This document shows positions 2,252 through 41,802 of a stretch of 64,000 bases of DNA, piece by piece. The translations under genes were made by a program, and so were the position numbers. The notes below the pieces were generated by a model, which had not been told where the DNA came from, made no database searches, and was given only the letters and a program-made list of their open reading frames with translations. Location of the stretch: the IMG/VR virus record IMGVR_UViG_3300029984_000001, positions 62,001 to 126,000 of that record. The stretch is one strand, 5' to 3'. How positions within the stretch are numbered: the first letter of the stretch is position 1; every line of letters starts with the position of its first letter.

Positions 2252-3579
2252 AAATGTGTTGGGACTTCACTATAGTAATATAGTGTCGAATAACTCTCTT
2301 AATTGCTGGGAAGTTCACAAAAGTCTATAAACCATAATCTAATAGAGAAATGGTTACGAAAGTAGAAACAATATATAGACCTGTTCTAAGCTGAAATAAA
2401 AGCTTTAGGGAATCTAAAGTGCTAAGGAATATTAACAAGGAATAATCAGCAGGAATAATTAAAATATTAATTTAGAAATGTGTGTAATAAAATAATAACT
2501 AAAAGAGGTGATAAAATTTGAATCAATTTATGTATAGAGTACCACCATTAATAGAAGAATGGAGAAGAGTATCAGATTATATTCCTTATGTAAAACCATA
2601 TTATTTAGTGAGTAATTACGGGAAGGTTTATAGTGAATTTAGTATGTGTAATATGAATTTGACTAATGTGGGTAGAGGATATGAAAAAATAAAATTAGCA
2701 TGTATAAACGGATTCCAAGATTTTCTTATTCATAGATTAGTAATGATGTGTTTCAATCCAATAGAAAACCCTGAATCATATCAAGTAAATCATATGCTTG
2801 GTATAAAAACAATTAATGAAACATGTGTTCTAGAATGGTGTAATAATAGTGAGAATGGTTTACATTCATATAGAATGGGGTTAAGAAAACAAGGAGAAGA
2901 ACATGATTGGGCTAAATTGGATAACAATACAGTACATAAAATATGTCAAGCTTTACAAGAGAGAATGAACTATAAAGATGTATGTAATTTTGCTGGAATA
3001 GGTTATGATGAAAAGATGAAAGATATTATATCTTCAATTAAAAATAAGAAAATATGGAAATCTATATCATGTCTATATAATATTCCAGAATCCAGTAGAA
3101 ATGATCAACTATTCTCTGATAATGAAGCACATACTATATGCAAGTATATGGAAACTAATATGAATAATAAGGAAATATTAAAAAACATGGGATTTGATAT
3201 AAACAATCAAGATAAAAATAAGAAGGGAAGTTTATATAGAACTTTAAATAGAATAAGAAGTAAAGATAGATACACACACATTTCTAAAGATTATAATTTT
3301 TAATTATTCTTCAACGACTATCGAAAGCTATATACTAAGACAATATTCTTAGTTGAAAATAAGGTATGTATTAATAGTATATACACGAAGCAAGTAGAGT
3401 AGAGCCTAAGTTATTGAGGTGGAGGTTTTCAGTAATAATGATATAATCCCTCCTTAAATCGAACAAGGGAGTTGCCTATATATTTTGATATAGGTAAATT
3501 ATATAGTCTAGTATCCTACTTAACAGTAGGGAAGTTTATAAAGGAACTGTACTATTTAACGAATAGTATGAATGTAACG
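2252..3579 (+). mobile_element. group I intron (phage IA2-like) in RNAP beta' gene
   Basis: Exon ends in U (cct) pairing with IGS gggacttc; P aattgctgggaa, Q aatcagcagg, R tcaacgacta, S atatagtct; terminal G at 3579; splicing restores NRNP|TIAYGSI. Confidence 0.9.
2518..3303 (+). CDS. intron-encoded HNH homing endonuclease (NUMOD4/HNH-type)
   Basis: YLVSNYGKVYS, HRLVM, VNHMLGIKTIN...LEWC..SEN; lies in the P6 loop of the intron. Confidence 0.85.
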   Translation: MNQFMYRVPPLIEEWRRVSDYIPYVKPYYLVSNYGKVYSEFSMCNMNLTNVGRGYEKIKLACINGFQDFLIHRLVMMCFNPIENPESYQVNHMLGIKTINETCVLEWCNNSENGLHSYRMGLRKQGEEHDWAKLDNNTVHKICQALQERMNYKDVCNFAGIGYDEKMKDIISSIKNKKIWKSISCLYNIPESSRNDQLFSDNEAHTICKYMETNMNNKEILKNMGFDINNQDKNKKGSLYRTLNRIRSKDRYTHISKDYNF

Positions 3580-3918
3580 ACCATAGCATATGGAAGTATA
3601 CTTTATAGTAAAGTAATAGATATTTCGTTCGATTACTCATTACAAATCCCATTAGGTATATTAGGCTTATTAGCGGCAGACTTCGATGGTGATGTATTGA
3701 ATGTTTTATTGATTATCAATGAAGAATTCAGAGTACAAGCAGAAAGAATATTAAGTGCAAGAAACGCAATGTTCATTTCAAAGAATGATGGTAAACTTGC
3801 ATCGAATATGATAGCAAATAAAGATACTACTATAAATATAAATAGTTTAATATCTATGTCTAGAACTAACTACACCCAAGATCAAATAGACCAAATAAAC
3901 AGATTAAAAGCAATGTAG
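3580..3918 (+). CDS. RNA polymerase beta' N-terminal subunit, exon 2
   Basis: Catalytic ADFDGD motif; spliced product 389+112 = 501 aa. Confidence 0.9.
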   Translation, partial: TIAYGSILYSKVIDISFDYSLQIPLGILGLLAADFDGDVLNVLLIINEEFRVQAERILSARNAMFISKNDGKLASNMIANKDTTININSLISMSRTNYTQDQIDQINRLKAM

Positions 3919-3921
3919 TAA

Positions 3922-3946
3922 ATAGAGAGGAATAATTCCTCTCTAT
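3922..3946 (+). terminator. stem-loop terminator
   Basis: ATAGAGAGGAA-taa-TTCCTCTCTAT. Confidence 0.6.
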
Positions 3947-3974
3947 AATTTTAAAGAAAGAAGGTAATAAATAA

Positions 3975-4805
3975 ATGAAACAATTTATGACTTGAGATCC
4001 AGAAATAGAAAAGACTCACCCAAGAATAGGAGAATCTAATACCAGTACCAATAATACTTATATGCAAATAAATAGATATAAAAATTGTGATAATATTGGA
4101 GTGAAAATGATATCCATATTACCCAACGATGATATCAAATATTTTCAAAAAGAAAAATGTAAATACGAACACTTTAGAGATGGTGCTGTAAAATATCCTT
4201 ATGATAAATCTGTTGTAAGTATTGGTTATTTAGGAGAAGGTATATATAATCCGCAAAATCAACCTAGAGCTTATAATATATGGAAACACATGTTAACTAG
4301 ATGCGATTTCTCCTACAATACAAAAAGACCTACATATGAAACATCAATTCCAGATCCATATTTTCAATCTTTTCAAAATTTTGCAGAATGGTATAACTGT
4401 AATTATTATGAATTCCCAAATGAAAGAATGGACTTAGATAAAGATATTCTTTGTAAGAGAAACAAAATATATCATCCTAATTTATGTATATTTGTACCTC
4501 AATATATAAATACACTTGTAATAGGATGTGATAGTAAAAGAGGAGAGCTTCCTATAGGAGTTCAATTTGATAAAGGTAATTCAATCAATTCTTACATTAC
4601 TAAAGTAAGTGTAAATGGTGTTCAGAAATACTTAGGTTCTTATCCAACTCCAGAAGAAGCTTTTAATGTTTATAAAATTGCTAAAGAAGAAGAGATTAAA
4701 AGAATTGCTAATCTTTATTGGTTTGAAAAAGGTGGTAAAGACATTCCACAATTCGAGAAAGTTTATTTAGCTTTATTAGGTTATCAAGTAGAAATTACAG
4801 ATTAA
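3975..4805 (+). pseudogene. free-standing homing endonuclease-like gene (HNH-variant + AP2-like C-terminus) with in-frame TGA at codon 7
   Basis: ATG 3975 MKQFMT*DPEIEKTHPRIGE is in frame with ORF 4062 and aligns to the N-terminus of paralog 57594; DLDKDIL..NKIY.P..C.FVP and LGSYPTPEEAF motifs. Confidence 0.7.
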
Positions 4806-4825
4806 ATAATAGGAGGAAATTATAT

Positions 4826-5020
4826 ATGGATGCTATGTCAGTAAGAAAAGGGACAATTTTATTTAAACCTAAAACTGATTTTAAAATCAGATATGTTATT
4901 ATAGATTATGATACTAATTATATTTATTGTATAGATCTAAATGGAAAAAATAAAAATATAAGACCTGTAATCAAATTCTCATATACAGAATGTGATGAAA
5001 AAGGTTTAATCAAAGAATAA
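4826..5020 (+). CDS. hypothetical protein
   Basis: 64 aa ORF with AGGAGG RBS. Confidence 0.65.
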   Translation: MDAMSVRKGTILFKPKTDFKIRYVIIDYDTNYIYCIDLNGKNKNIRPVIKFSYTECDEKGLIKE

Positions 5021-5038
5021 AAATAGGGGGTATTAAAT

Positions 5039-5686
5039 ATGGATCACAAAACAAAAAGAGTTAATATAAATGGAGAGTTAGTTGATATAGATAATAATAT
5101 AGTAGAGTTAGTTTTACTATTAAATAATCATACAGACTTAAAAACACAATATTCTTGTGAGAATCTAAATGAGTCTGGTAGAATTCAAATAATGTTACGA
5201 CCTTCTGTAACAGATAGACAAGTATATGATTTCTTTAAAGAACATTCATGGTTACTTAAACATTGTGAAATAGTTAAGAGATTAAAGAGATATGATAGAA
5301 ATAATAATCTTGTAATGCAATGGATTATGTATATAGATTTATCTAACTATAATTTATTATTAGATAGAATGTATATTGCTCTTACTGATAAAATATTTTA
5401 TTACAATGCTTTTGTATATGATTATTCAGAAAATCCAATAGAGACTAAAATGGTTATTGGGTTGGGTTTAGATTATGAACAAAAAGAATATAATAGAGAA
5501 GAATTATTAAATGATATTATATCTAAACTCGATCTACAAGGTTATAAAGATAAAATTTGGATTGTTAAAATGAATAAATTATATTATGTCAGATTTAATG
5601 ATAAATGGTTTAATTCTAGTACTTTAAAAAATATGACAGAATTTATTAAAGATAATAGAAAGATATATTTAAAAGTAATTAAATAA
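5039..5686 (+). CDS. hypothetical protein
   Basis: 215 aa ORF with RBS; N-terminal D..I..LV..LN....T.YSC motif common in phage proteins. Confidence 0.7.
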   Translation: MDHKTKRVNINGELVDIDNNIVELVLLLNNHTDLKTQYSCENLNESGRIQIMLRPSVTDRQVYDFFKEHSWLLKHCEIVKRLKRYDRNNNLVMQWIMYIDLSNYNLLLDRMYIALTDKIFYYNAFVYDYSENPIETKMVIGLGLDYEQKEYNREELLNDIISKLDLQGYKDKIWIVKMNKLYYVRFNDKWFNSSTLKNMTEFIKDNRKIYLKVIK

Positions 5687-5704
5687 TATAATAGGGGTTT
5701 ATAA

Positions 5705-6048
5705 ATGAATAATATACAAAGTAAATTATGGGATATGAATATAACTTTAGACGAATTAATAAAATTAAATCTAAAATGTAAAGTAGATAGAAATTATAAA
5801 GCACATAAACATGATGATTGTTTTAATGGATATTGTGTATATGTAAAACATCCTGAAGATAGTGTTAATACTTGTAGAACAATGATTGGGATTACTAGAG
5901 ATGGTTTACTTATTTAGGAACTGGTGAACCTGATAAAGATTATCCAATGGAAGATATATCAGAAGTATTAGGAGAAATGACTTTATTTCGTGATTGGTTA
6001 TTGAGAAAAGAAATTAATGAAAATAAAGTTAAATATTATTTAATATAA
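5705..6048 (+). pseudogene. hypothetical gene with probable 1-nt frameshift near 5905
   Basis: ORF stops at 5917 but another frame continues (TYLGTGEPDKDYPMED...YYLI) to 6048, right before the next RBS. Confidence 0.45.
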
Positions 6049-6064
6049 TAGGGAGTGTGTTATA

Positions 6065-6760
6065 ATGGAAGGAAATTTATATATTAAAAAGAATAGTTTT
6101 GATAAATCTATTTATGAGAAACATGAAGAAGGTGGAAAAATAACACTTGAAAAGTATTTGTATTATGATGATAAACAAAGACTAATAAAGACTGTACATT
6201 TACATCCTACTAATAATGTATATACTAATGAATTCTTTGAATCAGAAGAATTTAACATGTTACAAACATTACATATTTATAGAAAAAATGGTATGCCTAT
6301 AAGCAAATCAAAAACTAGAGTAGATAAGAATTGTATAAAGAGATATGATGATAGATTTGAATATAATATTAAGAGTAAAGAATGGGAATTTAAAAGAGTA
6401 GAAGAACGTAATGAATTAGACTTATTAACATACGAAAAGACTGATTATGGAACTGATATACAAAAAGAATATAATCCAGAAGGATTTATTATTATGGAAC
6501 ATAATGTATCTAAAGATACTATAAAGAAATATCTATATGATCATAAAAACAGATTAGTAAAAGAAATACATAATAATGGATATGAACAGGTTATTTATTT
6601 TGATGATAATGGTGGAGTTAGATATAGTAAAACTATTAGTGAAAATGGAAATACTTATGAATTTAAAATAGAAAATTGTATAATAGATGGAAAAAAATAT
6701 AAAAGGGAAATAAATACTTATTCTAGTGGTAATACGACGATTATAGAAACTGAATTATAA
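6065..6760 (+). CDS. YD/RHS-like beta-repeat protein
   Basis: Repeats YYDDKQRLIK, YNPEGFII, YDHKNRLVKE, FDDNGGV. Confidence 0.55.
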   Translation: MEGNLYIKKNSFDKSIYEKHEEGGKITLEKYLYYDDKQRLIKTVHLHPTNNVYTNEFFESEEFNMLQTLHIYRKNGMPISKSKTRVDKNCIKRYDDRFEYNIKSKEWEFKRVEERNELDLLTYEKTDYGTDIQKEYNPEGFIIMEHNVSKDTIKKYLYDHKNRLVKEIHNNGYEQVIYFDDNGGVRYSKTISENGNTYEFKIENCIIDGKKYKREINTYSSGNTTIIETEL

Positions 6761-6764
6761 GGAG

Positions 6765-7247
6765 ATGATAAATATGGGTAAATTTTGGGATATTCTAAAA
6801 AAGAGACAAAATAATAGTATACATAATATTTATAATAGTATATATAATAAAATGAACATAAATCACGAGGAACTTCTAAAGGTAGAGTTCTGTATTAATA
6901 TGGCTAAGGGTAATGATTATTATAGAGACTCTGTTGTAATAAAGTCAGAGTATACAAATGATAATCATATGGAAGTAATTAAGTTTAAAGATAAATATAC
7001 AGTCATAAAAATGTATAATAACTATGATACTGGAAAATGGCAGTCTTGTTACATATTAGATAGAGAGATAAACAGAATGGTATTTACAAGTGAAGATCCT
7101 GATGTTGGGTCAATCAATTTATTCGACGAATATAACAATCAAAAGGTAGTTATAGTATCTTTATTAGTGGAAAAACTTTTACATAGTGTATTATCGGTAT
7201 ATGATATTACACACTCTAAACAACTTTACATAAAATCTATAATATAA
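6765..7247 (+). CDS. hypothetical protein
   Basis: ORF track; RBS AAGGAG. Confidence 0.7.
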   Translation: MINMGKFWDILKKRQNNSIHNIYNSIYNKMNINHEELLKVEFCINMAKGNDYYRDSVVIKSEYTNDNHMEVIKFKDKYTVIKMYNNYDTGKWQSCYILDREINRMVFTSEDPDVGSINLFDEYNNQKVVIVSLLVEKLLHSVLSVYDITHSKQLYIKSII

Positions 7248-7261
7248 AGGAGATATATGAT

Positions 7262-7825
7262 ATGATAGATATAGAAAATTTGATTATGAAAACATTTACA
7301 TATACAGTAGAAGATATTAAAAATGGATATGTATTAGAAGATGAAATAGAAAAATATATAAAAGAAAAATATTATAATGAAAGAAAAAGATATATACAAA
7401 AATATATGAATAGTATAGATTCTTTATCATTTTTTGATTCTGTTATTCAATGTACAATAATGTTTCAATGTATAGAATTAGATTGGTATGAAAATGAAAA
7501 AATAGAAACAGACATAGATTCTGATTATAAATTTGTGATTAGACATTTCAATACAGACTTATGTTACTTTTATGGTAATAGGAAAATCGAGTATAATCAT
7601 CTATCTATCAATATAAATGGTCAATTATTCGATTCAGCATTATTAACAACAGGTAAATATGATAAAGCATGGTGTGAATTAATTAAATTGTCTGGAGAAT
7701 TTTTATATCCTAATAAAGTAGTATCAGAACAAATAGTAGAAGAAAAATTAGTTTACTTATTATCAAGGTCTGTTTCAGATCAAAAATTTATTAGATTAAA
7801 TAGTATAGAAGAATTTAAAGAATAA
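7262..7825 (+). CDS. hypothetical protein
   Basis: ORF track; RBS AAAGGAG; followed by hairpin terminator. Confidence 0.7.
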   Translation: MIDIENLIMKTFTYTVEDIKNGYVLEDEIEKYIKEKYYNERKRYIQKYMNSIDSLSFFDSVIQCTIMFQCIELDWYENEKIETDIDSDYKFVIRHFNTDLCYFYGNRKIEYNHLSININGQLFDSALLTTGKYDKAWCELIKLSGEFLYPNKVVSEQIVEEKLVYLLSRSVSDQKFIRLNSIEEFKE

Positions 7826-7864
7826 AACTAAAAGGGATATTAATCCCTTTTATTTTTTATGAAA

Positions 7865-7876
7865 AACATTAGAATA
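7865..7876 (+). promoter_or_regulatory. AR9-type late promoter AACA-N6-TA
   Basis: AACAttagaaTA directly upstream of 7888. Confidence 0.65.
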
Positions 7877-7887
7877 ATAGAAAGGAA

Positions 7888-9213
7888 GTGTTATATTTGA
7901 TAGATAAAAATAGATTTAAAGTAGTCACTATAAAGGATATAAAAGAAGAATCAAAAAAAGAAAAACTAAAAGAATTACATAGTTATAATTTAAATGCTTC
8001 TTTATCAATACCTTCTGTTGTTAATGGATATAGTCTTGGAGTCGGATTAATAAAGAAATGGTTCTTCAATAGAATAAAAGAATCTTATTTTAAATATTGG
8101 ACAGTGGATGAATCTAATTATAATTCAGCTTTTGATAGAGCAGAACAATATAAAAATTTTAAAATACAAAAACCGTCTTTACTAATAACTCCTAGAGTTG
8201 ATACACAATGGAATAGAGAAGGATTAGATAATAACTTATTCGGAGTGAATACATATCTAAGAAGAAAAGTTGTAGAAAATTCTTTTTTTAAAGATCCTAT
8301 AAATAATATTTATTTAGATATGGATACAGAACAATTAAGAATAAATTTTACCTTTAGAGTGAGAGTATCATCTAGATCACATCAACTAAACTTATTAAAA
8401 ACAATGAATATGAAATGTAGAATAGGAGCTACAGAAACAGATTATCAAGATATGGATTTTCATATACCATTTGATTTGATGTGTCAAATAGCAAAAGATG
8501 TAGGTTATAAAGTTATAGATAATAAGATAGAAAATATGCAAGGTTTTATATCTTATTTAAATCAACATTCACAGATGCCTATATTATATAGATATAGAAA
8601 GATAAATGCTAAATATGAATTCTTTTTAAGAATGAAGCAGGTATATACCCATATAGATTGTAGAGATCAATTGGATGCTGATGATGGAGAACAATTAGAA
8701 CAAACCAAAACCAATTATATAATAACAATGAATTGTGTTTTAGATATGGAGATTCCTAAATTTTATGCTTATTGTTCTAAGAATAGTCATATTTTTAATA
8801 TCGATTCAGTTCATGAATATACAATACCTGTTAACACAATTCAATTCCCAGATATAAAAGATGTAAATGAAAAAGGTTGGAATAAATATTATGAAATTGA
8901 TATAGAAGAAGATGATTTAAATAAACCTTTAGCTTTCAACTTTGAAGAATTATTCTTAGAAGAAACAGGAGATATATCTATTATCAAGAATATCATAGAT
9001 CATAATAATGAGTGCTATATATCACCTTCTGTATTTATTGAGATGAAATTGTATAATAATGGTCAAGAAGTAGATTATACAATAAATTGGAAAAACTTCA
9101 CTATAGAGTCCAATAATTTACTTTTAAGCCATATTACACATATAGTCATGTATTTAGATAGGAAATATATAAATGACTATAAAATCAATATGGACATGCT
9201 GTCAGATAGCTAA
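7888..9213 (+). CDS. putative virion structural protein
   Basis: 441 aa, preceded by late-type promoter; no enzymatic motif. Confidence 0.55.
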   Translation: MLYLIDKNRFKVVTIKDIKEESKKEKLKELHSYNLNASLSIPSVVNGYSLGVGLIKKWFFNRIKESYFKYWTVDESNYNSAFDRAEQYKNFKIQKPSLLITPRVDTQWNREGLDNNLFGVNTYLRRKVVENSFFKDPINNIYLDMDTEQLRINFTFRVRVSSRSHQLNLLKTMNMKCRIGATETDYQDMDFHIPFDLMCQIAKDVGYKVIDNKIENMQGFISYLNQHSQMPILYRYRKINAKYEFFLRMKQVYTHIDCRDQLDADDGEQLEQTKTNYIITMNCVLDMEIPKFYAYCSKNSHIFNIDSVHEYTIPVNTIQFPDIKDVNEKGWNKYYEIDIEEDDLNKPLAFNFEELFLEETGDISIIKNIIDHNNECYISPSVFIEMKLYNNGQEVDYTINWKNFTIESNNLLLSHITHIVMYLDRKYINDYKINMDMLSDS

Positions 9214-9301
9214 AACATTATATCTGAGAACAATAAATAATAAAATAGTATTATATATTTAACTTCATAGTGAAAATAAATATATAAGGAGATGTTGTAT
9301 T

Positions 9302-9553
9302 ATGGAATTAATAATAGTATCTGAAAATACAGTTAATAAAGAGGTTTATTTAGGTGGCAAAAAAATAAATATTTATGATTTTGGTGAATTATCAAGAACA
9401 AATAGAATAGCTACAAACTTTAAAATGTCAGAATTGAATTTCATACCAAAGGTTCATACTGATGAAGTGTTGTATAAATATGGTATTGATGAAGAGATGT
9501 ATAAAAAGATCTGTAAGAATTTAGTTGAAAATATCAAATCAATCCTTTATTAA
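9302..9553 (+). CDS. hypothetical protein
   Basis: 83 aa ORF with RBS AAGGAG. Confidence 0.65.
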   Translation: MELIIVSENTVNKEVYLGGKKINIYDFGELSRTNRIATNFKMSELNFIPKVHTDEVLYKYGIDEEMYKKICKNLVENIKSILY

Positions 9554-9591
9554 TAAATCTTTCTTGTATATTTATAAAAATGGGGTGAAAT

Positions 9592-9614
9592 TCAGAAGGG
9601 AAATTCCCTTCTGA
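9592..9614. terminator. bidirectional terminator
   Basis: TCAGAAGGGAA-a-TTCCCTTCTGA between convergent genes. Confidence 0.6.
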
Positions 9615-9618
9615 GTTT

Positions 9619-10077
9619 TTATAATTCTTTACTTATATCAGTAGTTTTTATCTCTTCATCCGTATCATCAAAAGTGCATTCTTTTTCCATAAGTTGTTTT
9701 TTCTTTTCTTTGATTATATTGCTTATATTGAAATCATCCAAATCCATTTCAAATAATCTTAATATTGTACATTTTATTTCTTCTTTAGTAATTCTACCTA
9801 ATAATGAATCTTTAAAATAATCATCTTCTTGTATTTCATTGTAAAATCTATCACCTACCATATCAGCCAATTTCATCTTAAAAGCATCATCAGATATATC
9901 TTTTATAGATAATATCTCAACTGTTTCTGTAGCCAGTATTGTAATTAAACGTGAATATTCTATAATTAATTCTAGAGTAGTTTTAGAACCACCTTTTTTT
10001 ACTTTATAGATATAACCTCCTGCTGTAATACCACAAACTAGAATAATAGAAATAAATATCAATACATTAATGTCCAT
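9619..10077 (-). CDS. membrane protein, possible holin
   Basis: N-terminal TM helix followed by basic residues; helical acidic tail. Confidence 0.5.
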   Translation of the reverse strand: MDINVLIFISIILVCGITAGGYIYKVKKGGSKTTLELIIEYSRLITILATETVEILSIKDISDDAFKMKLADMVGDRFYNEIQEDDYFKDSLLGRITKEEIKCTILRLFEMDLDDFNISNIIKEKKKQLMEKECTFDDTDEEIKTTDISKEL

Positions 10078-10182
10078 AATTATAACATCTCCTTTTATTT
10101 TTAATTATTCTAAAGTTTCTATAATTATTTTTTAATCAAAAGTAAACTAATATTTAAATACAATAAATGGAGGTAATGATAA

Positions 10183-11328: not shown

Positions 11329-11332
11329 AATA

Positions 11333-33244: not shown

Positions 33245-33247
33245 TTT

Positions 33248-33661
33248 TTATGATATTTTGTTTCTTAATTTAGTTAGAATAGTTTGATTATTTTTATATA
33301 TATCTGATAACATTTCTGCTAAAACATCAGCATGCATCATTCTTATTTTTTTCTTATTGAAATCTTTCATATCACATATATTATTTAAAAATAGAATAAT
33401 ATAATCTAGTTCAGTAGAACCATATATATCATGAGCTAATATAGCAGGTGATTGTTCATATTTTATATATTGTTCTTCATCTAGTATTACCATTTTAGAT
33501 AAAGAGAATATTTCTTTTTTATAGTCACATAATACATTATGTGTTATAAGATAAGTATCTCCTATTAATTGATATATTGATAATAAGTCGTAAGTAATTT
33601 CAGAAGTAGGTTTAGAATTTATAAATTCATTGAGAGTGTATGTTATATCTGGGTTACTCAT
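33248..33661 (-). CDS. baseplate wedge-like protein (T4 gp53/LysM-like)
   Basis: PAILAHDIYGSTELDYIILFLN motif. Confidence 0.65.
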   Translation of the reverse strand: MSNPDITYTLNEFINSKPTSEITYDLLSIYQLIGDTYLITHNVLCDYKKEIFSLSKMVILDEEQYIKYEQSPAILAHDIYGSTELDYIILFLNNICDMKDFNKKKIRMMHADVLAEMLSDIYKNNQTILTKLRNKIS

Positions 33662-33665
33662 ATAA

Positions 33666-34019
33666 TTATATCCTCCTTAATATTAATGGTTTATCTATAT
33701 TTCCACCTAAGAATGTAATGGCAAAAGTTTCACCTTTCAGACCTTTATAAGATGAATCTTTATGTCTATATAATTCTTGAGGAATTAAGACAGATATGTA
33801 ATTTGTACTCTTACAGTACTTATCTCGCACGTTAAAACCTTTTAATGTTTTATTCATAATATTGGACACATTTATTTTATTTTTTGTTTCTGTGATTTTT
33901 TGCTTGTCTGTAAAGGGTTGCATGGAAGGTATAGATATCTTAACTTCATTCCCATAGACAAAATCTTCAAGAGCAATACATATTTCAATACTAGTATTTT
34001 TCATGTCACTATTTTCCAT
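33666..34019 (-). CDS. baseplate spike/hub OB-fold-like protein
   Basis: C-terminal GETFAITFLGGNIDKPLI resembles gp5/GpV/VgrG OB motif; late promoter 34046-34057 (-). Confidence 0.55.
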   Translation of the reverse strand: MENSDMKNTSIEICIALEDFVYGNEVKISIPSMQPFTDKQKITETKNKINVSNIMNKTLKGFNVRDKYCKSTNYISVLIPQELYRHKDSSYKGLKGETFAITFLGGNIDKPLILRRI

Positions 34020-34095
34020 AATTTACACCACCTTAAACTTATTATTATTAAAATGTTCAAATTCATAAAAAATATAAAGAAAGAAGGAATTAGAA

Positions 34096-34548
34096 ATGGT
34101 AAAAGAAAAAATTGATATAAATGAAGTAATATATGAATTATTAAATGAATTAGGATTAGCAATATCAAATGAAAATTATATAATATTACAATCTGGAGAA
34201 TCTATTAAATTTAATGGAAAGGATATTAGATTTTCATATGAAGATAGATTCATTATAGATGGTAAAAAAGAAATATGGTTTGATCCTATAAATAATTCAG
34301 AACTTATACAAAATCTATATAATCAATATGTTGTAGACCATTATGAAAATGAGGGTATAAAGATATTATCCACTAAAGTTATGAGAGATAATAACTCTTA
34401 TAAGAATAAATTATGTGTTAATTTTATAGATGAGAATGATAGTACCAAGGGACAAATGGTAACGGATTTTTATACTAATATAAACATAGGTTATATTCAA
34501 ATAATGTTAATAAATGTAATGGTTGTAACTCATTTAGATAATAACTAA
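34096..34548 (+). CDS. hypothetical protein
   Basis: ORF track, RBS AAGGA. Confidence 0.7.
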   Translation: MVKEKIDINEVIYELLNELGLAISNENYIILQSGESIKFNGKDIRFSYEDRFIIDGKKEIWFDPINNSELIQNLYNQYVVDHYENEGIKILSTKVMRDNNSYKNKLCVNFIDENDSTKGQMVTDFYTNINIGYIQIMLINVMVVTHLDNN

Positions 34549-34563
34549 AAAGGACTGATATAA

Positions 34564-35799
34564 TTGTATAATGAAATATTAAATAGAGGTCAAGGATTTA
34601 CGGTAGATGAATCAATGAAATTCTTTGCAGACCCATATCAACAATTATTTCAGATAGATGGTGAAGCAGGGACAGGTAAATCCACGGTATTAAAACATAT
34701 AATAGCTAGAAATAGAATACCTTTAGAACGCATATTAGCCATGTCATATACTGGAGCAGCCGCAGTTATTTTAAAACTAAGTGGTTTCCCTAATGCTAAA
34801 ACATTACATTCAGGATTATATCATCCAGTAGATACATATATGACAGATAAACAGACAAATCAAATAATTTACAATACATATTATAATAGACCCAAGACCA
34901 CTACAGGATTTACACCTAAAATAAAAAGTAATTTTGATAATATTGATTTAATGATAATAGATGAAGCTCCAACTGTACCTATGTCAATGAGAAAAGATAT
35001 TATGAAACATGGAATAAAAGTTATAGCTTCAGGAGATCTTTTCCAATTACCTCCATTATTTGAGAAACCTGCATTTTTAACAGATGGTGTAGTACATCAT
35101 TTAACTGAACCTATGAGACAAGGTACTAACTCAAATATATTATATCTCGCAAGAAGAGCCAGAAGAGGTTTACCTATAAACTATGGATATTATGGAGATT
35201 GTTATGTAACAGATGAAGATGACTTGACTGATACAATGATTATGAGATCTGATATAGTAATATGTGGAACTAATAAAAAAAGAGATGAAATTAATAAAAG
35301 AGTTAGAGAAATAAAAGGTACTTGTAATAGTGAATTACCATTAAGAGGAGAAAGAGTAGTATGTAGAAAGAATAATTATAAAACTGTAATAGATGGAATT
35401 AATTTAGCAAATGGGTTGATAGGAACCGTAATGAATAATCCTGGAGTAGATAATTATGATAATAATACTTTTAAAATAGATTTTCAACCATTATTATTTC
35501 CAGGAATATTTAGTGATCTAAGATGCGATTATAAATATTTTATGGCTCCTTATAGTGAAAAAGAAAAAATTAAACAAGATAAATATAGTCTTGGTGAAAA
35601 ATTTGAATTCTCTTATGCAAGTACATGTCATCTTGCACAAGGTGCTTCACTTGCTAACGGTATTTATATCGAAGAATATATGTCACCAGAATTAAATGAT
35701 AGACTTAATTATGTAGGAATTAGTAGATTTCGGCAAGGTATGATATATATAAAAAGAAAAATTAGATTATACAATTGTGGAAGTTGGGATAGAGGTTAA
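34564..35799 (+). CDS. SF1B Dda/RecD-like DNA helicase
   Basis: GEAGTGKS, IIDEA, GDLFQLPP, TCHLAQG, YVGISR. Confidence 0.88.
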   Translation: MYNEILNRGQGFTVDESMKFFADPYQQLFQIDGEAGTGKSTVLKHIIARNRIPLERILAMSYTGAAAVILKLSGFPNAKTLHSGLYHPVDTYMTDKQTNQIIYNTYYNRPKTTTGFTPKIKSNFDNIDLMIIDEAPTVPMSMRKDIMKHGIKVIASGDLFQLPPLFEKPAFLTDGVVHHLTEPMRQGTNSNILYLARRARRGLPINYGYYGDCYVTDEDDLTDTMIMRSDIVICGTNKKRDEINKRVREIKGTCNSELPLRGERVVCRKNNYKTVIDGINLANGLIGTVMNNPGVDNYDNNTFKIDFQPLLFPGIFSDLRCDYKYFMAPYSEKEKIKQDKYSLGEKFEFSYASTCHLAQGASLANGIYIEEYMSPELNDRLNYVGISRFRQGMIYIKRKIRLYNCGSWDRG

Positions 35800-35840
35800 A
35801 ATCTCTATCTCTATTAATAAATTAAAAATGGGGGATTAGA

Positions 35841-36611
35841 ATGCCAAAGAGATTTAATTGTAAAAATGAAGAGGAAATGAGGACAGATATTAATAATAGA
35901 TTAGCAATATTGTGTGCACTAACAGGTTCTCATAATTATAACCTTAATACTAAAAATTCAGATAGAGATTCAAAAATATTTATAATGCCCAACATAGATG
36001 ATATCTATAATCATAAAATATTCACAAAATCATATAATATTGAATTCAATAATAATGATTTTTCTGTATATGATATTAGAAGATTACCAGATTTATTATG
36101 TAAATCTAATTGTAATTTTATGGAAATGTTATTTACTGTTGATTTGAGTATACATGAAATGTTTACTAAAGAAATAGAAGAAATATATAATATGAAAGAT
36201 GAGATAGCCAGATTTAATTTGTCATTCTTATACACTTCATTATATAATAATGCTAGATTATTTCAAGATGAATATATCAAAAAGGGTAATATGAAATCAG
36301 CATCACATTGTTTGAGATTATTAAGAACACTTCAGAAATATGCTTTGAACGATTTTACTGATTTTAAAAAAGCGTTATGGTTTGAAAACAATCCTAAAGA
36401 TTTAATCATGTATATAAAAACAGGAGAATATGACGAAAATAGATATTCATTCTCTAGTATTAATATACCTAAACTACTATCAGATGAATTTAGGAAAGCT
36501 GAAAAGTTTGAATCTAAATATAAACAATATGATTATGTACAAGAAACAGAAGATAAATTAAATAAAATAGTTAAAGACATGGTTCTTAAATATATAAAGA
36601 GTATGTTATAA
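35841..36611 (+). CDS. nucleotidyltransferase (Pol beta superfamily, RlaP/NrdC.11-like)
   Basis: GSHNYNLNTKNSDRD motif; K.N.N..E.L and HCLRLL downstream. Confidence 0.75.
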   Translation: MPKRFNCKNEEEMRTDINNRLAILCALTGSHNYNLNTKNSDRDSKIFIMPNIDDIYNHKIFTKSYNIEFNNNDFSVYDIRRLPDLLCKSNCNFMEMLFTVDLSIHEMFTKEIEEIYNMKDEIARFNLSFLYTSLYNNARLFQDEYIKKGNMKSASHCLRLLRTLQKYALNDFTDFKKALWFENNPKDLIMYIKTGEYDENRYSFSSINIPKLLSDEFRKAEKFESKYKQYDYVQETEDKLNKIVKDMVLKYIKSML

Positions 36612-36682
36612 ACTAAAAATATTTATAATTATATATTATATAACTGAATAAATAATAATATATTTTGAAAGGTAGTGTTTTA

Positions 36683-37054
36683 ATGAACAATTTTATGAAG
36701 AGAGACGAAATAATTAATGAGGATTTATTAAAAGAGGGGTTAATCAACCCAGATGCTTTACTCAACAAAAAAGAGAAATCTTATATGATACTATACTTTG
36801 CGACAGAACCAGTATCAAAAGAAGAAGAAAAAAGCTGGCATGTTGCTGTAGGAAGAGAAGAAGCATATAATTTTATCAAAGGAATGATAAGTTGTATAGA
36901 TTTAGAATCAACGAAAGTAGTTGTAGGAGGAACGACATATGAAGATGCTAAAAATGCCTATCAATTCATGAAATACATATCACAGTTCATGAATGATCCA
37001 ACGTTTAATATCGACGAATACTATACTCCAGATGAAGATGAGAAAGGAGAATAA
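36683..37054 (+). CDS. hypothetical acidic protein
   Basis: Start at MNNFMKR after GAAAGG; TATATTATA at 36632. Confidence 0.7.
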   Translation: MNNFMKRDEIINEDLLKEGLINPDALLNKKEKSYMILYFATEPVSKEEEKSWHVAVGREEAYNFIKGMISCIDLESTKVVVGGTTYEDAKNAYQFMKYISQFMNDPTFNIDEYYTPDEDEKGE

Positions 37055-37059
37055 TATTA

Positions 37060-37506
37060 ATGGCTAATGATTATAATTATTTCACTCAGAATATACAAAG
37101 AATGGGTGAAGAATTTTTAATGTTAAAGAATTCAAAAGATTTTCAAAGAGAAGCTCCAGCTATATTTAGACAATTAGCAAGAAGACAAATAGATTTAGAA
37201 ATGTACGGACACTTCTTTCTAGAAAAACAATTCTTAGAAAGTTGTATTAATGTTGCGAATGAGGAAATTTTACTAAATAAAGCAAGTGCAATAGGATTAG
37301 GGTATTATGTAGATTCTATGACATATCTGAATGGAGGTGTAGATCCTTATTTTCTAACCATCTTAAAAATGTATAGAGAGAAATGTGATGTTTATTCAAT
37401 TGTACATCAACATTTATGTATGTTAAGGGATACTGGGAATATTAATTATATAAAGAGTCTAGCAAGTATTCTAACAACAAATAGGACATTAGGAAATGCA
37501 TTGTAA
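37060..37506 (+). CDS. hypothetical protein
   Basis: ORF track, RBS AAAGGAG. Confidence 0.75.
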   Translation: MANDYNYFTQNIQRMGEEFLMLKNSKDFQREAPAIFRQLARRQIDLEMYGHFFLEKQFLESCINVANEEILLNKASAIGLGYYVDSMTYLNGGVDPYFLTILKMYREKCDVYSIVHQHLCMLRDTGNINYIKSLASILTTNRTLGNAL

Positions 37507-37560
37507 AATTTAAACCCTAAACATAAGAATAAATTTATGTTTATAGGAGGTTTAATTTTT

Positions 37561-38058
37561 ATGGCAAGTATAGATGATCTAATTAAATTATACAGAGATA
37601 CATTTGGTGATGAGGAATTAATCGTCATATCAGATAATGTTAAGGTTTTTAAAAATGCAGAAGGTCGTAGATTAATATTCGATGAGGATAGTAGAATGAT
37701 TCATTCTATTGCAGTTAATACTGATGGGTCTAACTTTGGAGTTCAGAATCTATTTCAATTCGAATCATTAATGTACGATCAAGTTCAATTCATGAATAAT
37801 TATGGTGGTGGAAAAGAACTGTCTGTTTTATTAGATAAATTAAAAGAAATTAACGTTATCGATGAAGATAAAAGATTAGAATTAGTTAATTACTTTAAAA
37901 GTCGATTTGCATTCGTTGATGGATATGGTAATAAACCATATGAAGATGTTAATGACAAAGACCGATCATATATTGATAAAGAACGTATACCTACGAATGA
38001 TGATGGTGAGATATTAACAAGTAAAGATACTTTATCAATAAATAAAATAAGACACTAA
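37561..38058 (+). CDS. hypothetical protein
   Basis: Start at MASID after AGGAGG. Confidence 0.75.
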   Translation: MASIDDLIKLYRDTFGDEELIVISDNVKVFKNAEGRRLIFDEDSRMIHSIAVNTDGSNFGVQNLFQFESLMYDQVQFMNNYGGGKELSVLLDKLKEINVIDEDKRLELVNYFKSRFAFVDGYGNKPYEDVNDKDRSYIDKERIPTNDDGEILTSKDTLSINKIRH

Positions 38059-38141
38059 AAAATTAAAACTAAAACTATTTATAACTATATATTATAATAA
38101 TGAAAATACATAACCAAAAAACAAATTTAGGAGGAATAAAT

Positions 38142-38963
38142 ATGTATAATGGACAACAAGGAAATCAATTCGGAATGGGTGGAACTTATTATGCACCACA
38201 AAAGAAAATAGAAATGCATCAAGCATTAACTGCTGAAGAAGAAGCAATGTTAAAGAATCAAAATAGATCTAATCTAAGTTTTAAACTAGATCAAATGGAA
38301 GTGCTTACAGGTATTTGTACACATAAAAGTAATACAACTAAAATGCCAGATATAACTTTATTAGGTGGAACTAGAGTTAAATGTAACATATGTCAAGAAG
38401 AATGGGATTTATTAGAGGATTTAGAATTATTTAAATCAGCCGTAGGTATTGTTATATCAGGATTACAAACAATGAAAACATGGTGGATTGATATCCCACC
38501 AGAAACTGCTAGAGAATACTTCCCAATTATACCATTATTAAAGAAAGCTCCTGCTGGTCTTCAAATGTCTATGCAATGTTGGAGACAATATGAAGAAGCT
38601 AGACAAGTAAATACAAGCAATGGAAATAACTCATTTAACATGTGGAATAACATAATGACAGGTGGATTTAATCCAATGCAACAACAACAAATGATGATGC
38701 AACAACAAATGATGCAACAACAAATGCAACAACAACAATATGGATACGACCCAAATCTAGCAATGAGTAATATGTATGCTGGAAATAATATGATGGGTGG
38801 CAATCCAATGGTACAAAACCAAGATCCAGGAAACTTCACTCCAGGTGCTGGTGGTTATGCTCCAGGAACAACAGGTATGATGAATAATATGGGTAATGGT
38901 CAAGGACAAACTGAAACTAGTGTAAGTAATACTGTACAAGTAACTAAAGTAATGAGTATGTAG
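38142..38963 (+). CDS. Zn-finger protein with Q/M/N/G-rich low-complexity tail
   Basis: CTH...CNIC ligands; QQQQMMMQQQMMQQQMQQQQYGY; AGGAGG before ATG 38142; own promoter and terminator. Confidence 0.8.
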   Translation: MYNGQQGNQFGMGGTYYAPQKKIEMHQALTAEEEAMLKNQNRSNLSFKLDQMEVLTGICTHKSNTTKMPDITLLGGTRVKCNICQEEWDLLEDLELFKSAVGIVISGLQTMKTWWIDIPPETAREYFPIIPLLKKAPAGLQMSMQCWRQYEEARQVNTSNGNNSFNMWNNIMTGGFNPMQQQQMMMQQQMMQQQMQQQQYGYDPNLAMSNMYAGNNMMGGNPMVQNQDPGNFTPGAGGYAPGTTGMMNNMGNGQGQTETSVSNTVQVTKVMSM

Positions 38964-39071
38964 TATAATATTTTTAAATAAATATAATGATGGGGTTCGT
39001 TCTCCATCATTATTTTTTACCTTCATTATAAACTATATAATGACAAAAAATAATTGAAGGAAGTGATGTAA

Positions 39072-40649
39072 TTGGCTATGCTGAAAAAAATGGATAAGAC
39101 AATGGAAGAAAATATTAGAGGATACGGTAATGAGATTATAACAAAGTTATTCCCTGATAATATAAGAGTCAATATAGGAATGTATATTGGTTCAAAAGGA
39201 AATTCTGGTTATTTAAATATGATACGGGAAGTTTTTCAAAATGCTTTTGATGAAGTTATGAGAGCAACAAGAGGTAAATCTCCTTGTAGTATAATAAGGA
39301 TTTTCTTTGATGAAAGAACTTTAGATTGTATGGTACAAGATGATGGTAGAGGTTTACCGTTTGAAAAGATGCATGACATATATGCTGAATTATCTACATC
39401 ATCTAATTATGAGAAGGAATTAGGAGACTACAGCTCAGGCAAACATGGGTTAGGTGGAAAAATTACGAATGCCCTTTGTGATAAATTTTCAGCAGAGTCT
39501 TATCAATTAGGAGATGCAAGAAAAATAGAATTTGAAGATGCAGTTGTTAATAAAAAAGGAATTTATAAGATACCTTATAAAAATAATCAACAAGGTACAT
39601 TAGTTTTATTTCATCCTTCAATAGAAATAATGGGTGGAATTAATCTAACTTGTGAAGAAGTATTAGCAATGATGAGAGGTATAGTATTCTTAGGTAAATT
39701 AGGTAGAATAGTAGAATTTCATGGTATTACTAATATGGGTAAACAAGTTGAAACTACTATAGTTAATGAATATGGAATACTAACAGATTTACTTGGTAGA
39801 GTTAAATCTCAATTGATTACACCAATTTTAATTGGTGGTGATGATGGTAACTGTAAAGCTGATATAGCATTTACATATGATGGTGAAGATACTTTGGAAG
39901 AGATACATAGTTATGCTAACTATTCTCCAACTACAGATGGTACACATGTTAAAGGATTTAAAGCTGGTATATCAAAATTCTTTATGGATTATATGAATAA
40001 GATTTATTTAGCCAAAGCGGGTTCTTTAAAAGGAAAGAAATCTAAATCTAATGCTAAACCATTACAAGTCGTAGCTTCAGATGTAAGTTGTGGATTAAAA
40101 GCTATTGTATCAGCATGTGCATTGATTCCTATCTTTGGAGGACAAGCTAAAGAAACAATAACTAATGAAGAACTTGAGACATTCATAAAAGATTTAGTAA
40201 TTAAAGCATTACAATCTTGGAGTAAAGAGAAGCCTATGGAATTAAATAAGATTTGTAATTATCTTAAAGATATAGCTATACTTCGGACTAAAGATGAAGT
40301 AGAAAAGATAAAGATTGGTTCTAAATATAAGACAGATGCTTTAAGTGGTGGACTTCCAAAGAAGTACCTAAGACCACAAGGAACTAAAGATCTAGAATTT
40401 ATAATAGTTGAAGGGGATTCAGCTTTAGGACCAGGAAGAGCAACAAGATGTAAATCTAGACAAGGTATGTTACCAATTAGAGGAAAGATGCCTAATATCT
40501 TTAATATGACAGATAGAAATAGAAAAGAGTTCTTAGAGAATGATGAAATTGCAGCATTTATTAATATCATATCTGGTGGTACAGGAAAATTCGGTGAAAA
40601 ATTTATGCCTAGTGATACTAAATACACTAAGATTATTATCATGTCGGAT
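39072..40649 (+). CDS. gyrB: DNA gyrase/topo IV subunit B, exon 1
   Basis: GMYIG, EVFQNAFDE, DDGRGLP, GKHGLG, GTHVKGF, VEGDSA, PIRGK, IIIMSD. Confidence 0.92.
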
Positions 40650-41802
40650 AAAATGTGTGTCCCTTCTCTATAGTAATATAGAGTCGAATAACCTATTAAA
40701 TGCTGGAAAGTCCACAAAAGTTCATAAACCATTATTATAATAAGAAATGGTTACGAAAGTAGAAACAATATATGAACCTGACATATGCTGAAATAAAAGC
40801 TTTAGTTGAGATTCTAAAGTGCTAAGTGTTATTGACAAGGGATTCTCAGCAGTAAAATAATTTGCTTAAATAAAATAATTAATAAAAAGGAGGTGAAAAA
40901 TATGAATGTTTTTATGCAACGATGTTTTGATTATTTTCCTATAAATATATCAAATCCTACTATAGAAATAGTTAGATATCCAGAGATGTGGAAACCTTTG
41001 AATATAATTGGAATAAAATATAATACATATAATATTAGCACAAAAGGTAGAATCTATTCAATACCAAAACAGAGATTATTAAATCCTCAATGTAATTCTG
41101 ATGGATATATGAAAATAAAATTATTAACAAATATTGAATCAAGAGAAGAGTTCAGTTTACATAGATTAGTTTTAATGACATTCTTTCCAATTTTCTATAT
41201 GAATGAATTAGAAGTGAATCATATAAATGGTAAAAAAGATGATAATGATATTGCAAACTTAGAATGGTGTAGTAGATCTCAAAATATACATCATAGTTAT
41301 TTACTTGGGTCTAGAAGTCAAATTGGTGTAAATAATGGTAATGCTAAATTTAATGAAAATGATGTAAGAAGAATATGTGAATATAGACAACAAGGATTAG
41401 TTGCAAGTCAAATATGTAAAGCTATGGATTTGGATTGTGAACCTAATAAGAGACATAGACGAGTAGAAAATATATTATTCGGAGTTACATGGAAACATAT
41501 ATCATCGCAATATGGAATATAAGTTTAAGCAACTTATTTTATTCAACGACTATCGAAAGCTATATACTAAGACAATATTCTTAGTTGAAAATAAGGTATA
41601 TATTAACAATATATACACGAAGCAAGTAGAGTAGAGCCAAGTGGTAGAACCGTTCCGTAATAAGGATATAAGAGTTCTTTAAATCGAAGTGATAGGTTGC
41701 CTATATATGATATAGGTAAATGATATAGTCTTAACACCTACTTAACAGTAGGGAAGTTCATAAGAGAACTGTATTATCTAACGAATAGTATGAAAACAAT
41801 TG
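40650..41802 (+). mobile_element. group I intron in gyrB
   Basis: Exon ends ggaU pairing IGS gtcc; P/Q/R/S elements near-identical to intron 1; terminal G 41802; splicing restores IIIMSD|ADKDGDHI. Confidence 0.9.
40902..41522 (+). CDS. intron-encoded HNH homing endonuclease
   Basis: HRLVL, VNHINGKKDDN...NLEWCSRSQN; in the P6 loop. Confidence 0.88.
   Translation: MNVFMQRCFDYFPINISNPTIEIVRYPEMWKPLNIIGIKYNTYNISTKGRIYSIPKQRLLNPQCNSDGYMKIKLLTNIESREEFSLHRLVLMTFFPIFYMNELEVNHINGKKDDNDIANLEWCSRSQNIHHSYLLGSRSQIGVNNGNAKFNENDVRRICEYRQQGLVASQICKAMDLDCEPNKRHRRVENILFGVTWKHISSQYGI

What the first reader, a model, noticed from the sequence alone, without database searches (positions are those of the whole stretch)
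2252..41802. Twin group I ribozymes retargeted to two unrelated essential genes
The RNAP beta' and gyrB introns share near-identical cores, e.g. about 58 identical nt at 3310-3367 versus 41542-41599, and both begin AAATGTGT. Their internal guide sequences differ to match each exon (gggacttc for ggaatcct; gtcc for ggat). Compensatory stem changes are visible (ctctctt/agggag versus cctatt/gatagg). Their HNH ORFs, in the same P6 position, are homologous but much more diverged than the ribozymes. This suggests intron transposition within a genome, with IGS adaptation and endonuclease divergence or swapping.
Basis: partly seen in the sequence, partly recalled or inferred. Interest (0 to 1): 0.65.

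Follow-up and report, generated by a model that had tools for sequence, protein, structure and literature searches.

The report
Related self-splicing introns in one phage

Summary
Window 2252-3579 (in an RNAP beta' gene) and 40650-41802 (in gyrB) are homologous group I-type introns. Their ribozyme parts are about 81-84% identical and include an exact 58-nt block. Their I-HmuI-like HNH genes, both in the P6 loop, share only 35% of residues.

The picture is wider than "twins":
- A third copy, with a decayed HNH gene, sits in the family-B DNA polymerase gene of the same 263.6-kb phage.
- Two more copies sit at two other sites in a sister phage.
- All five have a 4-5 bp P1 ending in a U.G pair, and the guide sequence changes with the target.
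- 34 of 104 modelled base pairs show compensatory double changes.
- The copies are recombinant mosaics of one another.
- The gyrB and polB copies share the same guide (GUCC) and near-identical target sites.

The family has evidently moved to new sites. Whether this happened inside one genome or through co-infecting relatives, and by what mechanism, cannot be decided here.

Splicing is inferred, not shown: no RNA data exist, and Rfam's group I model finds none of these introns.

This is a new member of a known kind (compare T4, Twort, SPO1/SP82, AR9 and PhiPA3) and a useful natural system for studying ectopic intron movement.

The parts
1085..2251 (+). Exon 1 of the RNAP beta' (N-terminal part) gene; ends ...VLLNRNP
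   Evidence: PHROG 2987 match ends at profile position 381. tblastn hits AR9 g270 and phiR1-37 g274 (RpoC N-terminus). The exon ends on a codon boundary.
2252..3579 (+). Intron A (1328 nt), group I type
   Evidence: 5' splice site follows U2251, paired U.G with the guide. The 3' end is G3579. Joining the exons gives NRNP|TIAYGS, colinear with the uninterrupted phiR1-37 g274 and with PHROG positions 381|382.
2261..2268 (+). Internal guide sequence of intron A (GGGACUUC; core GGGA pairs with exon UCCU)
2252..2460 (+). 5' ribozyme half of intron A: P1 loop, P2, P3 5' strand, P4, P5 and its extensions, P6 5' strand
   Evidence: Covariation counts.
2518..3303 (+). HNH homing-endonuclease ORF A (261 aa, TTG start behind AGAGGTG) in the P6 loop
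   Evidence: PHROG 59 and 959. I-HmuI 1U3E E=0.005. No Pfam hit. Catalytic His is present; the middle Asn of the motif is replaced (VLEW for NLxW).
3302..3579 (+). 3' ribozyme half of intron A: P6 3' strand, P7, three hairpins of P7.1/P7.2 type, P3 3' strand, P8, P7 3' strand, P9, P9.1, 9-nt tail
3580..3918 (+). Exon 2 of the beta' gene; contains the catalytic ADFDGD motif
39072..40649 (+). gyrB exon 1; ends ...KIIIMSD (first Asp of the Toprim DxD motif)
   Evidence: Pfam DNA_gyraseB and HATPase_c.
40650..41802 (+). Intron B (1153 nt), group I type
   Evidence: 5' splice site follows U40649 and the 3' end is G41802. Joining the exons gives KIIIMSD|ADKDGDHI, the canonical Toprim motif (comparison with the E. 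coli GyrB motif is from established knowledge).
40659..40662 (+). Internal guide sequence of intron B (GUCC, pairs with exon GGAU)
40893..41522 (+). HNH homing-endonuclease ORF B in the P6 loop (209 aa from GTG; the likelier start is ATG 40902 behind GGAGGTG)
   Evidence: Pfam HNH_3 + NUMOD4. I-HmuI 1U3E E=3e-10.
41803..42654 (+). gyrB exon 2
   Evidence: Pfam DNA_gyraseB_C. gyrA follows at 42668-45052.
4062..4805 (+). Free-standing HNH endonuclease ORF 144 nt downstream of the beta' gene. This is context; it is not shown to be part of the intron system.
   Evidence: PHROG 953 E=1.7e-49.

Best explanation
Introns A and B are two members of a small multi-copy family of mobile group I introns. 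The fold is IA2-like, with extra hairpins between P7 and the 3' strand of P3. The host is a 263.6-kb, 25% GC jumbo phage from peat, distantly related to phiR1-37 and AR9/PBS1.

How each copy works (inferred from anatomy): the RNA folds into the ribozyme. Its guide sequence pairs with the last 4-5 exon bases through a U.G pair. The RNA then splices itself out of the beta', GyrB or PolB message. This restores a conserved active-site region (NRNP|T; Toprim D|AD; PolB motif C D|TD).

The P6 loop carries an I-HmuI-like HNH nicking endonuclease gene. It would copy the intron into intron-free alleles of co-infecting relatives (inferred by homology).

Family history:
- The family has colonised at least five different sites in four genes across two sister phages. 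The ribozyme chassis is kept and the guide sequence changes.
- The endonuclease genes were exchanged or lost independently.
- The copies keep recombining with one another.
- The gyrB and polB copies share one guide and near-identical sites, so that move needed no retargeting.

Shown here: homology, structure covariation, site-matched guides, presence/absence at sites, mosaicism. Inferred: splicing, endonuclease activity, and the route of movement.
For: Homology:
- Ribozyme halves are 83-84% identical between A and B.
- A third copy lies at G000:C1:186675-187402 (minus strand) in polB, 77-85% identical.

Junctions:
- The beta' junction is fixed by colinearity with the uninterrupted phiR1-37 g274 and by contiguous PHROG profile positions.
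- The PolB junction falls inside motif C, read by eye from the sequence. The sister phage is uninterrupted there.

Structure:
- 34 of 104 modelled pairs show double compensatory changes among five sequences.
- On the 5' half, 98.6% of cells are paired. 12 pairs changed on both sides, against 3.9+-1.4 in shuffles (0/500) and 0-3 in slid controls.

Guides: five introns carry four different guides, each matching its own exon with a terminal U.G.

Rare codons: the codons before the B and C splice sites, TCG (3.8% of the four TCN Ser codons) and ACG (2.7% of Thr codons), put the G needed for P1 at position -4.

Mobility:
- The sister phage G001 carries family members at PolB motif B and in a gene that is uninterrupted in this phage.
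- G001 lacks the motif C copy.

Mosaicism: individual blocks are 98-100% identical between different pairs of copies. Max-chi-square permutation gives p<=0.003.

Endonucleases:
- Both ORFs match I-HmuI.
- All HNH ORFs are only 25-40% identical to one another.
- The polB copy keeps a 54-aa remnant resembling ORF A.

Gene copy number and assembly:
- The interrupted genes are single copy.
- The same sequence appears at 99.99-100% identity in contigs assembled from several other samples.
Against: - There is no direct evidence of splicing. All 24 public runs holding the phage are DNA, and no contig shows the spliced join.
- Rfam RF00028 gives no hit, even at E<=10 on the intron regions. It also misses the ORF-free introns in nrdD at E<=1.
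- Folding energies of the separate halves are only modestly better than shuffles (z -1.5 and -2.0).
- ORF A fails Pfam's HNH_3 model and has lost the middle Asn of the motif, so it may be inactive.
- No relative of this phage carrying the gyrB or beta' genes was found. Presence/absence at those two sites is therefore unknown.
Confidence: 0.8

Rival explanations
1. Each copy was acquired separately by ordinary homing from other, unsampled phages that already carried a family member at the same gyrB, beta' or polB site. In that case no jump between genes happened in this lineage.
For: The copies exchange segments with introns of a sister phage. For example, the P7.2 block of intron A is 98% identical to that of the sister phage's polB motif-B intron. 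Traffic between phages is therefore real.
Against: - Scans of IMG/VR, JGI metagenome contigs and 50,697 phage records found the family only in this phage and one sister phage.
- They never found a copy at the gyrB or beta' site elsewhere.
- The gyrB and polB copies share guide and site, which is what a direct move between those two genes would give.
- Somewhere, jumps between genes are still needed to explain five sites.
Confidence: 0.3
2. The genes are truly 'in pieces'. A free-standing endonuclease cassette split each gene, and the two halves are translated separately and assemble, as in the Aeh1 nrdA/mobE case. No RNA splicing is involved.
For: - Jumbo-phage RNAP subunits are naturally split.
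- Free-standing HNH genes are common in this genome.
- Splicing was not observed.
Against: - About 480 nt of non-coding flanks are conserved at 81-84%, with pervasive compensatory base-pair changes.
- The guides match the exons with a U.G pair, and the terminal base is G.
- At the junction no start codon was seen: the ORF listing finds only starts inside the intron or just past the junction.
- The junctions cut conserved motifs exactly.
Confidence: 0.03
3. The resemblance is only the generic conserved core shared by phage IA2-type introns, or an assembly artefact that duplicated one intron.
For: The core motif TTCAACGACTATCRAAAR occurs in at least 89 viral contigs.
Against: - Outside that roughly 90-nt core, other introns are not alignable. 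This holds even for others in this genome and for AR9's beta' intron.
- A, B and C align end to end.
- The copies differ at about 19% of positions and have different ORFs and flanks.
- Each is reproduced at 99.99-100% identity in contigs assembled from other samples.
- One contig in run X13 crosses the exon-intron A junction.
Confidence: 0.01

Closest known systems
SPO1/SP82/phi-e DNA polymerase introns with I-HmuI-type HNH nicking endonucleases (Goodrich-Blair and Shub 1994, cited in PMC11620839; I-HmuI structure 1U3E)
   Same: Similar group I ribozymes carry highly divergent HNH ORFs. The endonucleases here match I-HmuI directly.
   Different: Those introns sit at the same site of the same gene in different phages. 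Here the related ribozymes sit in different genes of one phage, with changed guide sequences.
The three homologous introns of phage T4 (td, nrdB, nrdD/sunY) and the multiple introns of Staphylococcus phage Twort (own knowledge; Twort orf142 is mentioned in PMC11878797)
   Same: Several related group I introns sit in different essential genes, or at different sites, of one phage genome.
   Different: By my recollection (not checked here), the T4 introns share mainly the core and carry GIY-YIG or H-N-H ORFs of different families. Here the copies are 74-81% identical over the whole ribozyme, show clear recombination mosaics, and include a pair that shares guide and target.
HNH-carrying group I introns in jumbo-phage RNA polymerase genes: AR9 g270/g271 and PhiPA3 gp210 (PMC11620839)
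   Same: An HNH intron lies in a conserved region of a phage multisubunit RNAP gene. AR9's intron shares the P7 core motif with this family.
   Different: - AR9's intron sits about 40 codons downstream, inside GDYDG|D, and aligns only weakly (24.6 bits).
- PhiPA3's intron is in a beta-like vRNAP subunit.
- In the sources read here, neither is reported to have close paralogues in other genes.
Related rDNA group I introns at different rDNA sites, taken as circumstantial evidence for reverse-splicing spread (PMC1299323; reviewed in PMC3984707)
   Same: Related introns occupy heterologous sites, with guide-exon complementarity of 4-6 nt.
   Different: Those targets are rRNA genes of eukaryotes. 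Here the targets are protein-coding genes of a phage, with HNH genes present, so endonuclease-driven ectopic insertion is an equally open route.

Membership tests
Group I intron (self-splicing ribozyme) | 5' splice site follows a U that forms a U.G wobble with an internal guide sequence (P1) | tested here: met
   All five family members have a 4-5 bp P1 ending in U.G. The guide sits at intron nt 8-13, just 5' of P2.
Group I intron (self-splicing ribozyme) | Intron ends in G (omega G), and exon joining restores the conserved reading frame | tested here: met
   The introns end at G3579 and G41802. Junctions NRNP|TIAYGS, MSD|ADKDGD and ITD|TDS are colinear with uninterrupted homologues or profiles.
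Group I intron (self-splicing ribozyme) | Conserved core helices P3-P9, including the P3/P7 pseudoknot, supported by covariation | tested here: met
   34 of 104 pairs show double compensatory changes. The 5'-half control test gave 0/500 shuffles. P4 and P7 are invariant, so they are uninformative.
Group I intron (self-splicing ribozyme) | Match to the curated covariance model Rfam RF00028 (Intron_gpI) | tested here: not met
   No hit at the gathering score, or at E<=10 on the intron regions. The model also misses the ORF-free introns in nrdD of this genome at E<=1, so the failure is uninformative. Limits of this model on phage introns are discussed in PMC11878797.
Group I intron (self-splicing ribozyme) | Guanosine-dependent self-splicing | not testable with these tools
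   No RNA runs hold the phage. DNA contigs show no spliced join.
Subgroup IA2 (phage-type group I introns) | Extra helices (P7.1/P7.2) between the 5' strand of P7 and the 3' strand of P3 | tested here: inconclusive
   Three hairpins occupy that position, and two show compensatory changes. No formal subgroup model was available. The subgroup itself is heterogeneous (PMC11878797).
I-HmuI-like HNH homing endonuclease | HNH_3 catalytic domain with a NUMOD-type DNA-binding module | tested here: met
   - ORF B: Pfam HNH_3 + NUMOD4 and 1U3E at E=3e-10.
- ORF A: only PHROG 59/959 and 1U3E at E=0.005, with no Pfam hit.
- ORF A keeps the catalytic His, but the middle Asn is replaced.
I-HmuI-like HNH homing endonuclease | Site-specific nicking of the intron-free allele | not testable with these tools
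   Needs purified protein and target DNA.
Transposed (paralogous) intron family | Copies at different sites are closer to each other than to any intron elsewhere, and sites are occupied in one genome but empty in a relative | tested here: met
   - Core identity among copies is 72-81%.
- Outside the family the best match is 78% over 98 nt.
- PolB motif B and motif C sites, and one further gene, are occupied in one phage and empty in the other.
- This was not testable for the gyrB and beta' sites, because no relative carrying those genes was found.

The most novel reading that the evidence does not exclude
The family spreads between unrelated genes by an RNA-guided route. The excised intron would reverse-splice into any message offering 4-5 bases complementary to its guide, and the product would then be fixed in DNA. 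On this reading the gyrB/polB pair (same guide GUCC, sites cGGAT|nCAGATA) is a recently captured event. That would be the clearest natural evidence in protein-coding phage genes for a pathway that still lacks direct support.
Probability: 0.2. Interest if true: 0.75.

Novelty: new member of a known kind. Interest (0 to 1): 0.5.

Why it matters
How group I introns reach new genes is still open. [quoted passage not shown] It adds that endonuclease-driven ectopic insertion is expected to be rare.

This phage pair offers five young, alignable copies at five sites:
- four different guide sequences;
- one pair of copies with identical guide and target;
- endonuclease genes in two different loops, one of them decayed;
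- visible recombination between copies.

That makes guide retargeting, endonuclease swapping and ectopic insertion testable with short synthetic constructs.

It also matters for annotation. Three essential genes (beta', gyrB, polB), plus nrdD and a second beta', would be called as fragments, and the standard Rfam model does not flag the cause.

Tried and rejected
- **Rfam cmscan.** Run on the window at gathering score, on both intron regions at E<=10, and on the loci holding the polB, nrdD and second beta' introns at E<=1. There was no group I hit, only chance matches.
- **Sequencing runs.** 24 peat DNA runs hold the phage and none is RNA. Laying four runs on window 1000-6000 gave fragmented low-depth contigs. 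There was no 2251->3580 join and no intron-free allele.
- **Relatives.** The search for related loci with gyrB exon 1 and beta' exon 1 returned only the same phage. The sister phage fragment lacks both genes.
- **Metagenome-contig scan.** A scan with a family motif found only this phage and the sister phage.
- **Possible seventh intron.** A candidate near genome position 203 kb, found by motif, was rejected: it is the antisense of a coding region.
- **Folding energies.** The separate halves gave weak z-scores. The argument rests on covariation instead.
- **AR9.** The idea that AR9's beta' intron occupies the same site as intron A was rejected: it lies inside GDYDG|D, about 40 codons downstream.
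- **Steps not taken.**
  - The large protein searches, structure prediction and complex prediction were not used, because the family scans settled the proteins.
  - The joined (spliced) coding sequences were not sent to any search tool. Exons were searched separately by reference.
  - ORF-deleted ribozymes were built and analysed only inside scripts, so no covariance model of the whole ribozyme was built.
Full report
**Setting**

The window is bases 62001-126000 of a 263,571-bp virus record that CheckV rates as complete. GC content is about 25%. Its RNAP beta' and GyrB proteins are only 27-31% identical to those of phiR1-37, AR9/PBS1 and related jumbo phages. Twenty-four public peat metagenome runs hold the sequence. 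Contigs from several other IMG/VR and JGI assemblies reproduce it at 99.99-100% identity.

**Observation check**

Both non-coding halves of the two elements align end to end. The 5' halves are 84% identical and the 3' halves 83%. By blastn the figures are 83.0% over 212 nt and 84.2% over 272 nt. The exact 58-nt block at 3310-3367 = 41542-41599 is real. The ORF regions between the halves show no significant nucleotide similarity. The two proteins share 35% identity over 164 aa.

**Boundaries of intron A**

- Exon 1 (1085-2251) ends VLLNRNP on a codon boundary.
- Two in-frame G residues, 3570 and 3579, could end the intron.
- The uninterrupted phiR1-37 g274 reads NRNPSINIGS against NRNP|TIAYGS.
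- The PHROG 2987 profile runs 381|382 across the 2251|3580 join.
- Intron A is therefore 2252-3579. Exon 2 carries ADFDGD, the catalytic motif of beta'.

**Boundaries of intron B**

- Exon 1 (39072-40649) ends KIIIMSD.
- The Toprim motif continues ADKDGDHI from 41803.
- Intron B is therefore 40650-41802.

**More copies than two**

Searching the phage's own genome found a third copy at 186675-187402 on the minus strand (L011:1276-2003:-). It is 77-85% identical to A and B.

- It interrupts a family-B DNA polymerase (Pfam DNA_pol_B and divDNApol).
- The junction is VVCITD|TDS, inside motif C.
- It holds only a 54-aa ORF remnant. The remnant is 56% identical to the N-terminus of ORF A and shows no similarity to ORF B.
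- It lacks the P9 region.

The genome also holds three more distant group I-type introns. Two ORF-free ones are in nrdD. One, with an HNH ORF in a different loop, is in a second beta' paralogue. That makes six introns in all.

**Sister phage**

A 94-kb sister-phage contig (G001) encodes proteins 73-77% identical to this phage's. It carries two further family members.

- **G1** lies at PolB motif B (NSLYG^C). Its HNH ORF is in a P7.1-type hairpin, and P6 is reduced to a GAAA hairpin.
- **G2** lies in a gene whose orthologue here (genome 213993-215507) is uninterrupted.
- G001's polB is open across our motif C site.
- Our polB is open across its motif B site.

**Is it a group I intron?**

Rfam's model finds nothing. 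It also misses the ORF-free nrdD introns, so that failure says little. The anatomy and covariation carry the case.

- **Alignment.** I removed the ORF-bearing loops inside a script and aligned the five ribozymes.
- **Consensus fold.** It gives P2, P3, P4, P5 with extensions, three hairpins between P7 and the 3' strand of P3, P8, P9 and P9.1. P7 was added by hand as the pseudoknot.
- **Whole-ribozyme covariation.** 34 of 104 pairs show compensatory changes on both sides.
- **Control on the 5' half.** On a reference-based alignment of the 5' half, 98.6% of cells pair. Twelve pairs changed on both sides, against 3.9+-1.4 in shuffles (0 of 500). Slid controls gave 0-3.
- **P1.** All five introns have a 4-5 bp P1 ending in U.G, with the guide at the same place: UCCU/GGGA (A), GGAU/GUCC (B and C), GUGAU/GUCAC (G2), GGGU/GCCC (G1).
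- **3' end.** All five end in G.
- **P6.** Each P6 stem is a different sequence but still closes the ORF loop (by eye from the alignment).

**Endonucleases**

- ORF B has Pfam HNH_3 + NUMOD4. It matches the nicking enzyme I-HmuI (1U3E) at E=3e-10.
- ORF A matches PHROG HNH families and 1U3E at E=0.005.
- ORF A fails Pfam and has Val where the middle Asn of the motif should be, so it may be weakened.
- All HNH ORFs compared are 25-40% identical. The set includes a free-standing one at genome 59673-60437 and the one in the second beta' intron.
- ORF A is as close to the free-standing gene (39.6%) as to any intron ORF.
- The endonuclease genes therefore did not co-diverge with the ribozymes. They were swapped, moved to another loop, or lost.

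**History of the family**

Core identities are 81% (A-B), 80% (B-C), 74% (A-C) and 72-77% to the sister-phage copies. The signal is mosaic:

| Block | Pair(s) | Identity |
|---|---|---|
| P7-P7.1 | A = B | 100% |
| P2 | B = C = G2 | 100% |
| P7.2 | A - G1 | 98% |
| P5c-P4' | G1 - G2 | 99% |

Max-chi-square tests with permutation give p<=0.003 for several triplets. The copies therefore recombine, both within the genome and between phages, and a single tree or a direction of transfer cannot be given.

**The gyrB and polB sites**

The two sites read tcGGAT|gCAGATAaa and acGGAT|aCAGATAgt.

- Much of the identity follows from the shared x-Asp|x-Asp coding.
- The G at position -4 pairs with the guide. 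It comes from TCG (3.8% of the four TCN Ser codons) in gyrB and from ACG (2.7% of Thr codons) in polB.
- The intron-free sister allele has the common ACA and GAC there.
- This fits either selection for P1 pairing or co-conversion of flanks.

**What is not shown**

- Splicing is not shown. No RNA run holds the phage, and four DNA runs gave no spliced or intron-free join.
- Endonuclease activity is untested.
- The route of movement is open: reverse splicing, or ectopic cleavage followed by illegitimate recombination.
- The interrupted genes are single copy, so the phage needs splicing to make them.
- Exons were searched one by one.

**Comparison with what is known**

- Similar ribozymes with divergent HNH ORFs are known from the SPO1-group DNA polymerase introns.
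- Multiple related introns in one phage are known from T4 and Twort.
- HNH introns in jumbo-phage RNAP genes are known from AR9 and PhiPA3 (PMC11620839).
- Decoupling of intron clade and nuclease type is described for Bastillevirinae (PMC11878797).
- This finding is therefore a new member of a known kind.
- Its value is as an unusually young and well-resolved family for testing how group I introns reach new genes, which PMC3984707 lists as unresolved.

Noticed in passing
L012 (G000:C1:29300-32700), about 715-1215 and 1720-2180: Two ORF-free group I-type introns split the anaerobic ribonucleotide reductase gene nrdD into three exons. They share only the roughly 90-nt P7/P7.1 core with the A/B/C family. 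Rfam misses them as well.
   Followed up: partly
L017 (G000:C1:220500-225500), minus strand, about 1940-3150: A second RNAP beta' paralogue (PHROG 2986) is interrupted near its DFDGD-like motif by another group I-type intron. Its HNH ORF (2050-2922) starts after the P7.1 hairpin instead of lying in P6. Exact splice sites were not worked out.
   Followed up: partly
L016:2174-2965 (G000:C1:59673-60464), just upstream of the window: A free-standing HNH endonuclease gene, 39.6% identical to intron ORF A, lies between an RNAP beta-like gene and a hydrolase gene. Only about 85-100 nt of spacer lie on each side, which leaves no room for a ribozyme.
   Followed up: partly
window 4062-4805: Another free-standing HNH endonuclease ORF (PHROG 953, E=1.7e-49; no Pfam hit) lies 144 nt after the intron-bearing beta' gene. 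Whether it targets that gene is unknown.
   Followed up: no
window about 1990 and 2302 (run X14): In one peat run, a contig of a slightly different strain follows the beta' exon to position 1990. It then continues into sequence matching the intron core from 2302. This hints that a relative carries a family intron at another site in the same gene. The contig sequence itself was not available.
   Followed up: no
L072:7350-7745: An ORF-free, more distant relative of the family (69 bits on the 5'-half profile) sits in an unrelated 9-kb viral contig. By eye the host gene looked like a terminase large-subunit gene, but it was not checked.
   Followed up: no
(Staphylococcus phages S6 and MarsHill; Bacillus phage SP-15): Weak relatives of the family exist in cultured jumbo phages, at 72-78% identity over 98-142 nt. 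One is in a prohead protease gene (MarsHill) and one in a DNA polymerase gene (SP-15). The chassis is therefore widespread in phages of Gram-positive hosts.
   Followed up: no
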